The notes under the pieces are model-generated. The model saw only the letters and a list, made by a program, of their open reading frames with translations, was not told the origin of the DNA and made no database searches. Positions 18,141-20,127 of a DNA stretch of 64,000 nucleotides are shown in pieces. Position numbers and translations under genes: made by a program. Location of the stretch: the NCBI GenBank assembly GCA_002269645.1, contig NIVC01001021.1:313694-377693 (forward strand). The letters run 5' to 3'. Source of the stretch: Macrostomum lignano (lineage: Eukaryota). How positions within the stretch are numbered: the stretch's first letter is position 1; each line of letters begins with the position of its first letter.

Positions 18141-18314
18141 ATGGGATCCACCTGGCAGTTTGTCAAATTCACAGCAGTATTCTTGGCCTCGGCGGCTGTA
18201 GGCTCGGAGCTCGTGCACCGCTTCTTCAAGCCCCTGTCTGACCTGCCAGTCGAGTTAGAAGAAGCCAGACGTCAGAGGCGTCTGCAGCAGCAGCAGCAAA
18301 ATGAGATTAAATGA
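18141..18314 (+). CDS. UQCC6: 57-aa BRAWNIN/UQCC6/Sloth2-like mitochondrial complex III assembly microprotein
   Basis: [57 protein letters not shown]. Matches the remembered family pattern W.Q..KF....LAS...GS..VH..(Y/F)KPL.DL. In-frame upstream stop at 18132. Too short for the ORF track. Confidence 0.75.
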
Positions 18315-20127
18315 ATTCTCCTACTGCGTTAGCCAGTCTCTCGTGCTGGTGCCGTATGAAGCTTATCACGTGACCCGCTACCACCAGTGGATGCTGCAGC
18401 CTGATATATTGGAGGCCACGGCGTCAGAGCCTCTTAGCCTAGAGGTGAGCTGTTCAGTTTTCATTATCCGGTATTTGTAACTGCGTTATTGCCGACTGCT
18501 AGAGATCGAGATGAAGATTATTCGCCCTCTATGACTGTACCCGCCTATTATCAGGAAAGATTCTCCACAATGATTTACCCTCCTTACCCTCTATGACCGT
18601 ACCCGCCTATTATCAGGAAAGATTCTCCACAATGATTTACCCTCATTACCCTCTATGACCGTACCCGCCTATTATCAGGAAAGATTCTCCACAATGATTT
18701 ACCCTCATTACCCTCTATGACCGTACCCGCCTATTATCAGGAAAGATTCTCCACAATGAATTACCCTCATTACCCTCTATGACCATACCCGCCTATTATC
18801 AGGAAAGATTCTCCACAATGGTTTACCCTCAATACCCTCTATGACCGTACCCGCCTATTATCACGAAGATTCTCCACAATGATTTACCCTCTTTACCCTC
18901 TATTACTGTACCCGATCCTTGACAGGAAGAGTTCGAAATGCAGCGTAGTTGGCGCAATTCAGACGACAAGTTGACCTTTATTGTGCTGCACAGAGACACT
19001 CTGGAATCCGCTATGGGGTCTAAAGTGCCGGTAAGTGGATCCTTTGCGCTTACTTGTGGGGACCAGCTATGGTCAGGGTGTGGGGACCAGCTATGGTCAG
19101 GGGTGTGGGGACCAGCTATGGTCAGGGGTGTGGGGACCAGCTATGGTCAGGGGTGTGGGGACCAGCTATGGTCAGGGGTGTGGGGACCAGCTATGGTCAG
19201 GGGTGTGGGGACCAGCTATGGTCAGGGGTGTGGGGACCAGCTATGGTCAGGGGTGTGGGGACCAGCTATGGTCAGGGGTGTGGGGACCAGCTATGGTCAG
19301 GGGTGTGGGGACCAGCTATGGTCAGGGGTGTGGGGACCAGCTATGGTCAGGGATGTGGGGACCAGCTATGGTCAGGGGTGTGGGGACCAGCTATGGTCAG
19401 GGATGTGGGGACCAGCTATGGTCAGGGGTGTGGGGACCAGCTATGGTCAGGGGTGTGGGGACCAGCTATGGTCAGGGGGGTGGGGACTCCTTAGCTGCAG
19501 TAAGTGCAGAAGCATGCAAAGTTAAGCAGAATTGGCCGCGGTTAGTCATACTATAGCCAACAATCTTCTATGTAGTTTTTAATTCGTATACTGGCAATCG
19601 GTACTCGTGAACAGCCGCGTCTTTCATACCGGTTTATTCGCCAGGCGTCCAACAAAGAGTCAGCTTTGTTGCCATGGCAACGCCAGCCGGCAGCGGAGTT
19701 GGCGGCAATGATTGGCGACGTGAATTCTTTTTCAATTCCCAACATCGATGAGGACAACCAAGACAACGAGGAGGTTGTTAGCGAAGGTCGCGAGTTCGAA
19801 CTCGAAGTGATGATAGCCGAACCGGCATACAGAGGCAGGGGCCTGGGCCGCGAGGCTGTCCAGTGCTTGATTGCCTACCTGTCCGAGGCGCTGGGTGCTC
19901 AGCCTGGCCAGCTGCTGGCAAAGATTGGCGACGATAATCTGGCAAGTCAGCGGCTGTTCACCGGCCCCGGACTGCGGTTCCAGCTGGCCGACAGGCAGCC
20001 TGTGTTCCGGCAGGCCACCTACCGCTGTCCGAGGGAGGCTGCGCCCTCGACACCCCCGGGCTGGGCTGGCGTGCTCACCTGCTCGCCGCTGCCCGCTGCT
20101 GCCGCCGCCTGTGGACTCAGTGCTTAG
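18301..20127 (+). CDS. NAT9: N-acetyltransferase 9 (GNAT); exons 18301-18444, 18926-19030 and 19645-20127, ~243 aa
   Basis: MRLNE...[18 protein letters not shown]...[10 protein letters not shown]|[21 protein letters not shown]...MIGDVN...[21 protein letters not shown]...[14 protein letters not shown]. Both introns are phase-0 GT-AG. Confidence 0.92.
18525..18915. repeat. 62-bp tandem repeat in NAT9 intron 1
   Basis: About six units of ctctatgaccgtacccgcctattatcaggaaagattctccacaatgatttaccctcattac. Confidence 0.92.
19052..19487. repeat. 25-bp minisatellite in NAT9 intron 2 (gtggggaccagctatggtcaggggt)
   Basis: About 17 almost perfect units. Confidence 0.95.

What the first reader, a model, noticed from the sequence alone, without database searches (positions are those of the whole stretch)
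18141..18444. BRAWNIN/UQCC6-like microprotein overlaps the NAT9 start: candidate new bicistronic arrangement
Seen: a 57-codon ORF (18141-18314) whose last 14 nt contain the NAT9 ATG (18301) in another frame (caa aAT Gag att aaa tga). There is no room for a polyA site, promoter or acceptor between the two ORFs. Knowledge: the peptide matches BRAWNIN/C12orf73/Sloth2, and Drosophila Sloth2 is translated from a bicistronic mRNA with Sloth1/SMIM4. Inference: here the microprotein shares an mRNA with a different partner, NAT9. Translation could use leaky scanning, stop-restart coupling, or a frameshift after the (CAG)4CAAAAUG run that yields a fusion. Standard annotation would miss it.
Basis: partly seen in the sequence, partly recalled or inferred. 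Interest (0 to 1): 0.8.

Follow-up and report, generated by a model that had tools for sequence, protein, structure and literature searches.

The report
Unannotated BRAWNIN gene overlapping flatworm NAT9

Summary
The window is Macrostomum lignano scaffold NIVC01001021.1. ORF 18141-18314 (57 aa) passes the Pfam DUF4516 (UQCC6/BRAWNIN) cut-off and keeps most of the family's best-conserved residues. It ends 14 nt inside NAT9, whose ATG at 18301 is the conserved MRLN start of GenBank PAA73280.1, in the +1 frame. All three paralogous M. lignano loci keep the ORF and the overlap. GenBank does not annotate the ORF, and one UniProt model fuses it to NAT9 through a 22-nt pseudo-intron.

The bicistronic reading is plausible but not shown.
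- For it: no ATG in any frame for 157 nt between the two starts. The peptide has no internal Met, against a median of 4 in 108 homologues, and Ala replaces a 99%-conserved Met. The first AUG has a weak context and the second a strong one. No AATAAA lies before the NAT9 3' end.
- Against it: M. lignano uses spliced-leader trans-splicing, and acceptor-like sites lie inside the small ORF. Annotation behaviour argues indirectly against the closest one.
- Frameshifting has no sequence support, and stop-restart coupling has only the overlap in its favour.

UQCC6's usual upstream partner SMIM4 is absent here, and no UQCC6-NAT9 linkage was found in other taxa. Verdict: a new member of a known kind (microprotein on an overlapping upstream ORF), of moderate interest.

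The parts
18141..18314 (+). Unannotated UQCC6/BRAWNIN (DUF4516) microprotein ORF: 57 codons plus TGA, single exon, hydrophobic segment at about residues 10-26
   Evidence: Intact in paralogous loci L002 and L003.
18301..18314 (+). 14-nt overlap holding the NAT9 ATG (18301-03, +1 frame) and the UQCC6 TGA (18312-14)
   Evidence: 100% identical in all three paralogs.
18301..18444 (+). NAT9 exon 1 (MRLNEFSY...SLE), GT donor at 18445
   Evidence: exact reconstruction of PAA73280.1. The MRLN/MKLN start is shared by NAT9 homologues.
18926..19030 (+). NAT9 exon 2
19645..20127 (+). NAT9 exon 3, coding part (GNAT / Acetyltransf_3 core), stop at 20125-20127
18134..18144 (+). UQCC6 start context attccgcATGg (C at -3, G at +4): suboptimal
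   Evidence: direct reading
18294..18304 (+). NAT9 start context cagcaaaATGa (A at -3; CAAAATG)
   Evidence: CAAAATG is the 'optimal' context cited for sloth2 in PMC9681215.
18144..18300 (+). 157-nt stretch between the two start codons with no ATG in any frame and no Met codon
18285..18296 (+). (CAG)4 run, read as Q4 in UQCC6 and S4 in the NAT9 frame. It is (CAG)5 in paralog L003, an in-frame length polymorphism.
18282..18287 (+). CTGCAG, a match to the published M. lignano SL trans-splice acceptor motif [T/C]TNCAG, 13 nt upstream of the NAT9 ATG and inside the UQCC6 ORF. Candidate only.
   Evidence: motif from PMC8629364. 0.5 such matches are expected by chance in the 261 nt scanned.
18072..18077 (+). 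TTGCAG, a second acceptor-motif match, 63 nt upstream of the UQCC6 ATG. It is a candidate SL site for a bicistronic mRNA and is not conserved in L003.
18256..18258 (+). TAG, the first upstream stop in the NAT9 frame. The UniProt models P0001 and P0124 begin right after it.
18306..18311 (+). ATTAAA hexamer overlapping the last UQCC6 codons. It is the only poly(A)-signal-like hexamer between the UQCC6 stop and the NAT9 3' end.
21204..21209 (+). AATAAA, the likely NAT9 (and shared) poly(A) signal after a 3' UTR of about 1.1 kb that contains a 40-nt minisatellite

Best explanation
The M. lignano NAT9 locus carries a functional but unannotated UQCC6/BRAWNIN gene (a complex III assembly microprotein) as an overlapping upstream ORF. 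One mature mRNA most likely carries both cistrons and ends at the NAT9 poly(A) site. Scanning ribosomes first meet the UQCC6 AUG in a weak context (C at -3) and make UQCC6. A fraction leak past it, meet no other AUG in any frame for 157 nt, and initiate at the NAT9 AUG (CAAAAUGA). Shown here: the ORF, its family membership, the overlap, its conservation in three paralogs, the ATG/Met depletion, the start contexts, and the absence of SMIM4. Inferred: that both ORFs sit on one mature mRNA and that NAT9 is translated by leaky scanning.
For: Family membership: Pfam DUF4516 above the gathering score, phmmer and profile hits to proteins named BRAWNIN/UQCC6, and most of the best-conserved family positions kept: G, W, F, G, V, H, P, L, D.

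NAT9 start: it equals GenBank PAA73280.1 and the conserved MRLN N-terminus.

Purifying selection on the ORF region: 98.7-99.4% identity between paralogs against 91-95% in the 101 nt upstream (Fisher p=0.004 and 0.03) and 86-96% in introns. The only changes are one synonymous change, one V-to-I change and one in-frame CAG.

Leaky-scanning signature: there is no ATG between 18144 and 18300. The peptide has 0 internal Met, while 107 of 108 homologues have at least one (median 4). The column that is Met in 99% of homologues is Ala here. Contexts are weak then strong, the same design shown experimentally for sloth1/sloth2 (PMC9681215).

Transcript extent: no AATAAA lies between the UQCC6 stop and 21204. 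The GenBank NAT9 CDS starts at Met and is not flagged partial in all three loci. By contrast, the neighbouring ADK CDS starts PDM... exactly after a tttcag| acceptor. This suggests the annotated NAT9 transcripts reach upstream of the in-frame TAG at 18256.
Against: No transcript, SL-read, poly(A)-read, Ribo-seq or peptide data could be accessed, so the shared mature mRNA is inferred.

M. lignano trans-splices about 30% of its genes and has operons (PMC8629364). AG acceptors, including one exact [T/C]TNCAG match 13 nt before the NAT9 ATG, lie inside the small ORF.

Given the peptide sequence, the lack of out-of-frame ATGs is uninformative (P=0.78). The Met-free argument rests on one lineage and a phylogenetically redundant homologue set: 1 of 24 representatives at <60% identity also lacks Met.

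The annotation-based inference is weakened by the NR gene, whose CDS starts right after a TAA.

The paralogs are too similar for dN/dS, and no other Macrostomum species was available.
Confidence: 0.5

Rival explanations
1. Alternative processing rather than bicistronic translation. NAT9 is translated from a shorter mRNA whose 5' end (an SL trans-splice acceptor or internal TSS) lies inside the UQCC6 ORF. UQCC6 comes from a longer isoform or from a short mRNA polyadenylated just after its stop. Because the NAT9 ATG precedes the UQCC6 stop, any one pre-mRNA could then give only one of the two complete messages. This would be an 'overlapping operon' with mutually exclusive processing.
For: About 30% of M. 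lignano genes are SL trans-spliced and about 15% are in operons, and the top acceptor motif is [T/C]TNCAG. CTGCAG at 18282-87 matches it 13 nt before the NAT9 ATG. TGCCAG at 18244-49 has a 72% pyrimidine tract upstream. The neighbouring ADK shows an acceptor 6 nt before its ATG. ATTAAA at 18306 followed by a GU-rich stretch could serve as a UQCC6 poly(A) signal (and direct reading).
Against: Two motif matches in 261 nt are close to chance (0.5 expected). The 25 nt before CTGCAG are purine-rich (40% pyrimidine). If the mRNA started at 18259-18300, the GenBank CDS should be 5'-partial like ADK, but it starts at Met in all three loci. This model gives no reason for purging every Met/ATG from UQCC6. 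In S. mansoni, all 45 operon pairs examined have at least 5 bp of spacer (PMC12582326), whereas here the spacer is negative.
Confidence: 0.3
2. Termination-reinitiation. Ribosomes translate UQCC6, terminate at UGA 18312-14, move back 11 nt and restart at the NAT9 AUG.
For: The stop and start lie within 14 nt. Backward restart over such distances is known from viral coupled ORFs (from my own knowledge).
Against: A 57-codon upstream ORF is long for efficient reinitiation without a dedicated element. The only UGGGA (TURBS-like motif 1) is at 18142, about 155 nt upstream rather than 20-70 nt. The region shows no significant RNA structure (z=-0.84).
Confidence: 0.07
3. The small ORF is only a regulatory overlapping uORF or a decaying relic, and the peptide itself has no function. 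A working UQCC6 gene would lie elsewhere in the genome.
For: Whether M. lignano has another UQCC6 copy could not be tested. The Pfam score is only 1 bit above the cut-off. Several conserved family residues are changed: Y to F three times, the 99% Met to Ala, and the 98% Ala to Phe.
Against: The full-length ORF is intact in three paralogs, with the best-conserved G/W/F/G/V/H/P/L/D positions kept and a family-typical length. Its conservation equals that of NAT9 exons and exceeds the flanks. No M. lignano stand-alone UQCC6 appeared in the profile search, though small proteins are generally unannotated there.
Confidence: 0.08
4. A UQCC6-NAT9 fusion protein is made by +1 frameshifting near (CAG)4CAAAAUG, or by removal of a 22-nt micro-intron (18254-18275).
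For: UniProt A0A1I8GFE2 (P0125) is exactly such a fusion model...PVE|[12 protein letters not shown]....
Against: NAT9 is in the +1 frame, so -1 slippage cannot give the fusion, and no X_XXY_YYZ site exists in the ORF. The 22-nt 'intron' has a GTTAG donor against the GT[G/A]AG consensus and is far shorter than the real introns here (481 and 614 nt). The model lacks a start Met and looks like a gene-predictor bridge. The NAT9 MRLN start is ancestral.
Confidence: 0.02

Closest known systems
Drosophila sloth1-sloth2 (SMIM4/UQCC5 - C12orf73/UQCC6) bicistronic transcript (Bosch et al. 2022, PMC9681215)
   Same: It involves the same microprotein family (UQCC6/Sloth2). Two ORFs are packed with essentially no spacer. 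The first AUG is in a weak context and the second in CAAAAUG. Leaky scanning was demonstrated there and is proposed here.
   Different: In flies, and in contigs L004, L005 and L008 examined here, UQCC6 is the downstream cistron behind its paralog SMIM4. In M. lignano it is the upstream cistron, its partner is the unrelated enzyme NAT9, the ORFs overlap by 14 nt instead of being 5 nt apart, and no SMIM4 is nearby.
Conserved microproteins encoded by upstream or overlapping uORFs of ordinary mRNAs (e.g. MIEF1-MP, SLC35A4-MP, ASDURF on ASNSD1; from my own knowledge)
   Same: A functional small protein, often mitochondrial, is encoded 5' of an unrelated main ORF on one mRNA, and it is routinely missed by annotation.
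   Different: Those peptides are known only as uORF products. UQCC6 is elsewhere a stand-alone or SMIM4-linked gene, so this case would be a lineage-specific relocation of an old gene into the uORF position.
Flatworm SL-resolved operons, e.g. cytochrome b-c1 subunit 7 - enolase (PMC12582326) and M. lignano operons (PMC8629364)
   Same: A small complex III-related gene lies directly upstream of a housekeeping enzyme on the same strand, in an animal that trans-splices.
   Different: Known flatworm operon pairs have a spacer carrying a poly(A) site and then an SL acceptor: at least 5 bp in S. mansoni, with a peak around 100 bp in M. lignano. Here the coding sequences overlap, so standard resolution into two complete mRNAs from one precursor is impossible.
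MOCS2A/MOCS2B-type overlapping bicistronic genes (from my own knowledge)
   Same: Two overlapping ORFs in different frames lie at one locus.
   Different: The MOCS2 products are subunits of one enzyme. UQCC6 and NAT9 have no known functional link.

Membership tests
UQCC6 / BRAWNIN / Sloth2 (Pfam PF14990, DUF4516) | Match to the family HMM above the curated gathering score | tested here: met
   28.0 bits against 27, E=1.7e-6, profile positions 7-42 of 46. Also phmmer hits to PF14990 proteins.
UQCC6 / BRAWNIN / Sloth2 (Pfam PF14990, DUF4516) | Size of about 50-100 aa, one N-terminal hydrophobic helix, and the conserved G...VH.YY.PL.DL core | tested here: met
   57 aa. The hydrophobic maximum is at residues 10-26. 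G21, V25, H26, P31, L32, D34 and L35 are kept, and YY is replaced by FF. Deviations: the 99%-conserved Met is Ala, and the N-terminus is MGSTW instead of MPAGVSW.
UQCC6 / BRAWNIN / Sloth2 (Pfam PF14990, DUF4516) | Mitochondrial inner-membrane location and a role in complex III assembly | not testable with these tools
   Needs localisation and knock-out experiments.
sloth1-sloth2 type bicistronic gene (SMIM4 upstream of UQCC6) | An SMIM4/UPF0640 (PF15114) ORF immediately upstream of the UQCC6 ORF | tested here: not met
   No SMIM4 motif or tblastn hit (all E>0.1) in the 64-kb window, L002 or L003. It is present in L004, L005 and L008 from other taxa.
Bicistronic mRNA translated by leaky scanning | Both ORFs present on one mature mRNA | not testable with these tools
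   Only indirect evidence: the non-partial GenBank NAT9 CDS in three loci against the 5'-partial ADK, and no AATAAA before 21204.
Bicistronic mRNA translated by leaky scanning | Suboptimal context at the first AUG, a good context at the second, and no AUG in between | tested here: met
   attccgcATGg against cagcaaaATGa, with 0 ATG in 157 nt and 0 internal Met against a family median of 4.
SL trans-splicing-resolved operon (flatworm type) | An intercistronic spacer with the upstream gene's poly(A) site followed by the downstream gene's SL acceptor | tested here: not met
   The coding sequences overlap by 14 nt. Known pairs have at least 5 bp of spacer.
SL trans-splicing-resolved operon (flatworm type) | An SL acceptor used just upstream of the downstream cistron | tested here: inconclusive
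   There is a motif match at 18282-87, but it is near chance, lacks a pyrimidine tract and is disfavoured by the annotation logic.
NAT9 (GNAT, Pfam Acetyltransf_3) | GNAT domain hit, orthology to NAT9 and a conserved N-terminus | tested here: met
   PF13302 E=9.4e-9. There are 541 homologues, many named NAT9 or alpha/beta-tubulin N-acetyltransferase 9. The sequence is identical to PAA73280.1, and homologues share the MRLN/MKLN start.
Termination-reinitiation (TURBS-dependent coupling) | An 18S-complementary UGGGA motif 20-70 nt upstream of the restart site | tested here: not met
   The only TGGGA is at 18142, about 155 nt upstream. No significant structure was found.
Programmed ribosomal frameshift fusion | A slippery site in the correct frame with a frame relation compatible with the shift | tested here: not met
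   No X_XXY_YYZ site in the ORF, and NAT9 is in the +1 frame.

The most novel reading that the evidence does not exclude
UQCC6 left its ancient SMIM4 partner in the Macrostomum lineage and became an obligate overlapping upstream cistron of NAT9. Selection then purged every Met codon from it so that NAT9 can be reached by leaky scanning. In the more exotic version, the same precursor is also trans-spliced inside the UQCC6 coding sequence. That would make an 'overlapping operon' in which each pre-mRNA must choose between a UQCC6-bearing and an SL-NAT9 message.
Probability: 0.4. Interest if true: 0.55.

Novelty: new member of a known kind. Interest (0 to 1): 0.45.

Why it matters
It adds a missing respiratory-chain assembly factor to the gene set of a flatworm model organism that supports transgenesis. 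It also shows that the sloth1-sloth2 linkage is not universal in invertebrates.

If the shared mRNA is confirmed, the complete loss of Met from a family that normally has about four would be a clean natural example of coding sequence shaped by leaky scanning. It would also be a test case for how a trans-splicing animal handles overlapping cistrons.

The wider lesson is for annotation. ORF callers with a 100-aa minimum miss such genes, and ab initio predictors fuse them to the neighbouring gene.

Tried and rejected
- **Word-index search with the 57-aa peptide alone:** it found nothing. An exhaustive phmmer search and a 3-sequence profile were needed.
- **Exact look-ups of the peptide and of the NAT9 last-exon ORF:** neither is on record, so no Logan transcript contigs of Macrostomum were reachable.
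- **The 'g2' in BOX15_Mlig019531g2:** I first read it as 'second gene of a transcriptional unit'. I rejected this because the NR paralogs Mlig008902g1 and g2 sit on different scaffolds, so the suffix numbers members of a 95% cluster.
- **The N-termini of UniProt models P0001 and P0124 (KKPDVRG...):** I considered them as evidence for an SL site at 18258/59. I rejected this because they begin right after an in-frame TAG and come from a different predictor-based annotation. P0125 is a frame-bridging artefact.
- **Supplement searches:** searches of four M. lignano papers for NAT9, C12orf73 or the gene ids returned nothing. A search for Mlig019531 found no paper.
- **Out-of-frame ATG depletion:** synonymous-codon resampling shows it is expected anyway (P=0.78), so only the Met-free peptide carries weight.
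- **RNA structure around the overlap:** not significant.
- **Rfam scan of the window:** no hits.
- **NAT9 next to UQCC6 in other taxa:** none on five contigs, L004-L008.
- **First exon-search script:** it timed out.
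Full report
**Source of the window**

The spliced NAT9 product of the window is 100% identical to GenBank PAA73280.1 (BOX15_Mlig019531g2) of Macrostomum lignano. The DNA around it is identical to scaffold NIVC01001021.1 of assembly GCA_002269645.1 (Mlig_3_7), with window coordinate = L001 coordinate + 8300. [quoted passage not shown] About 30% of its genes receive a 35-nt spliced leader ending in AUG, and about 15% lie in operons (PMC8629364).

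- The ORF 18141-18314 encodes 57 aa.
- The NAT9 ATG is at 18301 in the +1 frame, so the two ORFs share 14 nt.
- The coordinate 18444 is the end of NAT9 exon 1.
- Exons 18301-18444, 18926-19030 and 19645-20127 reproduce the GenBank protein exactly, with GTGAGC and GTAAGT donors and pyrimidine-rich CAG acceptors.
- NAT9 homologues from fungi to animals start MRLN, MKLN, MRTN, MKIN or MKQN. The ATG at 18301 is therefore the ancestral start, not an internal Met.

**The small ORF is a UQCC6/BRAWNIN homologue**

- Pfam DUF4516 (PF14990) scores 28.0 bits against a gathering score of 27, with E=1.7e-6. Even after allowing for roughly a thousand ORFs in a 64-kb six-frame scan, this stays significant.
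- An exhaustive phmmer search of 1.84 billion representatives gives two 66-93 aa proteins with the family core at E of about 3-5e-4. A third hit, to a 3095-aa protein, has no aligned stretch and I ignored it.
- A profile built from the three sequences retrieves 110 proteins. All carry PF14990, and many are named BRAWNIN, UQCC6, 'sloth 2' or C12orf73 homolog.
- In an alignment with 108 homologues of at most 100 aa, the worm protein keeps the highly conserved G, W, F, G, V, H, P, L and D positions. It replaces three conserved Tyr by Phe.
- Its length of 57 aa lies within the family range of about 50-96 aa. A single exon therefore suffices and no splicing need be invoked.

**The ORF is conserved within the species**

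- M. lignano has three paralogous copies of the NR - NAT9 - ADK neighbourhood.
- All three keep the small ORF, the overlap and both start codons. The differences are one synonymous change, one V13I change and one extra CAG that is in frame for both ORFs.
- The ORF-only part is 98.7-99.4% identical between paralogs. The 101 nt just upstream are 91-95% identical (Fisher p=0.004 and 0.03), and intron segments are 86-96% identical.
- This indicates purifying selection on the region. The paralogs are too close to separate coding from non-coding constraint.

**Existing annotation misses or mangles the ORF**

- GenBank calls only NAT9 at all three loci.
- UniProt entries from the older ML2 annotation begin right after the in-frame TAG at 18256 (P0001 and P0124, KKPDVRG...).
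- One entry, P0125, joins UQCC6 residues 7-38 to the NAT9 frame by removing 18254-18275. This is a 22-nt GT..AG 'intron' with a poor GTTAG donor. I regard it as a predictor artefact. It shows only that the predictor saw coding potential in the small ORF.

**The ancestral partner is missing**

- Bosch et al. report that SMIM4 (sloth1) sits directly upstream of UQCC6 (sloth2) in fly, choanoflagellate, sea squirt and lamprey (PMC9681215).
- I saw the same layout on three unrelated contigs:
  - L005 has a PF15114 ORF ending 2 nt before the DUF4516 ORF.
  - L008 has a two-exon SMIM4 ending at the UQCC6 start.
  - L004 has the SMIM4 motif FSMINWTVGQTNFC in frame upstream of UQCC6.
  - Two Logan ORFs carry both domains.
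- In M. lignano, no SMIM4 motif or tblastn hit appears in the 64-kb window or in the two paralogous loci.
- Conversely, none of the five foreign UQCC6 contigs (L004-L008) carries NAT9, and no NAT9 homologue examined has a UQCC6-like extension.
- No paper in the library mentions both NAT9 and BRAWNIN.
- The pairing therefore looks specific to the Macrostomum lineage. Other Macrostomum species were not available, so I could not test this directly.

**Logical constraint on how the two proteins are made**

The NAT9 AUG lies upstream of the UQCC6 stop. Any 5' end that gives a NAT9 mRNA without the UQCC6 start must therefore lie inside the UQCC6 coding sequence. One precursor cannot be cut into two complete mRNAs the way ordinary flatworm operons are. 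In S. mansoni, all 45 operon pairs examined have at least 5 bp of spacer, and M. lignano intergenic distances peak near 100 bp. That leaves two options: a mature mRNA carrying both ORFs, or mutually exclusive alternative processing.

**Evidence favouring a shared mRNA with leaky scanning**

1. No ATG occurs in any frame in the 157 nt between the starts.
   - A mononucleotide shuffle gives P(0)=0.12.
   - Synonymous resampling shows that, given this peptide, out-of-frame ATGs are rare anyway (P=0.78).
   - The informative part is therefore the peptide itself, which has no internal Met.
   - Among 108 homologues the median is 4 internal Met, and only one other has none. In a set of 24 representatives at <60% identity the figure is 1 of 24.
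   - The column that is Met in 99% of homologues is Ala18 here.
   - An in-frame AUG would also capture scanning ribosomes, so this is what selection for leaky scanning would produce.
2. The UQCC6 AUG has C at -3 (attccgcATGg). The NAT9 AUG has A at -3 in CAAAATG. This is the weak-then-strong layout shown experimentally for sloth1/sloth2.
3. The only canonical AATAAA downstream of the UQCC6 stop is at 21204, after the NAT9 3' UTR.
4. The GenBank pipeline cuts transcripts at SL sites.
   - The neighbouring ADK CDS in L002 and L003 begins 'PDM...' at the first base after tttcag|. It is a 5'-partial ORF starting at the acceptor.
   - If NAT9 mRNAs started between 18259 and 18300, its CDS should likewise be partial (SSSKM... 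or KKPDV...).
   - In all three loci it starts at Met and is not labelled partial.
   - This argues against the otherwise attractive CTGCAG acceptor at 18282-87.
   - The argument is indirect and rests on my understanding of how TransDecoder treats ORFs open to the transcript's 5' end. It is weakened by the NR gene, whose 'partial' CDS starts right after a TAA located 6 nt beyond a TTTGCAG acceptor.

**Evidence favouring alternative processing**

- The organism's habit of trans-splicing.
- Two exact [T/C]TNCAG matches, at 18072-77 upstream of UQCC6 and at 18282-87 13 nt before the NAT9 ATG. About 0.5 such matches are expected by chance in the 261 nt scanned.
- A pyrimidine-rich TGCCAG at 18244-49.
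- An ATTAAA at 18306-11 followed by a GU-rich stretch, which could end a short UQCC6 mRNA.
- The hexamer is, however, built from the conserved NAT9 codons R-L-N. A strong poly(A) cut there would have truncated the annotated NAT9 gene, which it did not.

**Other mechanisms**

- Reinitiation after a 57-codon ORF would need a dedicated element. The only UGGGA is about 155 nt upstream, and the RNA around the overlap folds no better than shuffles (z=-0.84).
- Frameshifting: NAT9 is in the +1 frame and no slippery heptamer exists in the ORF.

**Verdict**

The sequence feature is real, and the small ORF is very probably a functional, unannotated UQCC6 gene. I put the following probabilities on the mechanisms:

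| Mechanism | Probability |
|---|---|
| One mRNA serving both proteins by leaky scanning | about 0.5 |
| NAT9 made mainly from a shorter, separately processed mRNA | about 0.3 |
| Reinitiation, a non-functional ORF, or a fusion | the rest |

In kind, this is an overlapping-uORF-encoded conserved microprotein, a class already known from sloth1/2 and from MIEF1-MP and ASDURF (the last two from my own knowledge). What is new is the gene pair, the lineage, the loss of the SMIM4 linkage and the Met-free peptide. The decisive data are SL-read, poly(A)-read and long-read maps at NIVC01001021.1:331,834-332,007.

Noticed in passing
window 27517-27528 (ADK start); L002 20608-20622, L003 19176-19190: The GenBank adenylate kinase CDS begins 'PDM...' exactly after a tttcag| acceptor 6 nt upstream of its ATG. 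If the SL (ending ...TTGCATG) is spliced there, the SL AUG is in frame with ADK (AUG CCA GAC AUG) and could donate an alternative start codon.
   Followed up: partly
window 13104-13140 (L001 4804-4840): The nuclear receptor (zf-C4) CDS, flagged 'partial' in GenBank, starts at a non-ATG codon immediately after an in-frame TAA. That TAA is 6 nt downstream of a TTTGCAG acceptor motif, and the first Met is 7 codons further on. The start of this gene model looks unreliable in all three paralogs.
   Followed up: partly
window 15976-17531, 18525-18914, 19055-19487, 20154-21143: Large minisatellites surround and invade the locus: 34 nt x 46 between the NR gene and UQCC6, 62 nt x 6 in NAT9 intron 1, 25 nt x 17 in intron 2, and 40 nt x 25 in the NAT9 3' UTR. 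A TATC-type microsatellite lies at 17912-18004, just upstream of the small ORF.
   Followed up: no
L003 about 9775-9785 (aligned to window 18072-18080): In paralog L003 the TTGCAG acceptor-like motif upstream of UQCC6 is changed to TTCATG. This creates an upstream ATG that would open a 12-codon uORF ending before the UQCC6 start, if it lies in the 5' UTR. L003 also has (CAG)5 instead of (CAG)4.
   Followed up: partly
L004 872-2269 (Logan SRR13503348): In an unidentified species, the SMIM4-UQCC6 unit is followed 154 nt downstream, on the same strand of a 2.3-kb contig, by a long ORF encoding a C2H2 zinc-finger protein. L005 likewise has a 195-aa open frame 150 nt after UQCC6. UQCC6 units may sit upstream of other genes in other taxa too.
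   Followed up: partly
window 18266-18284: A short perfect hairpin (CAGACGUC-aga-GGCGUCUG) lies inside the UQCC6 ORF just before the CAG run, 17-35 nt upstream of the NAT9 AUG. It partly coincides with the 22-nt pseudo-intron of model P0125. The whole region is not significantly structured.
   Followed up: no
P0234 / L006 777-968 (Logan SRR25569774): This is the only other UQCC6 homologue of 108 without internal Met. It shares the SAAxGxE..VHR motif with the M. lignano protein. No NAT9 or other obvious downstream ORF lies on its 3.5-kb contig, and the organism is unknown.
   Followed up: partly
window 17662-17667: AATAAA at the end of an AT-rich, well-conserved stretch (96-98% between paralogs) about 480 nt upstream of the UQCC6 ATG. 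It may be the poly(A) signal of the upstream NR gene. If so, NR and UQCC6/NAT9 would be closely spaced same-strand genes, and so a candidate operon.
   Followed up: no
window 40550-41476 (-), 42769-44307 (+), 50573-51496 (+), 56935-57999 (-), 24762-25400 (-): Other genes in the window by Pfam: a fatty-acid hydroxylase, a BACK/Kelch protein, two rhodopsin-type GPCR fragments, and an EIF2B-epsilon-like hexapeptide-repeat exon.
   Followed up: no
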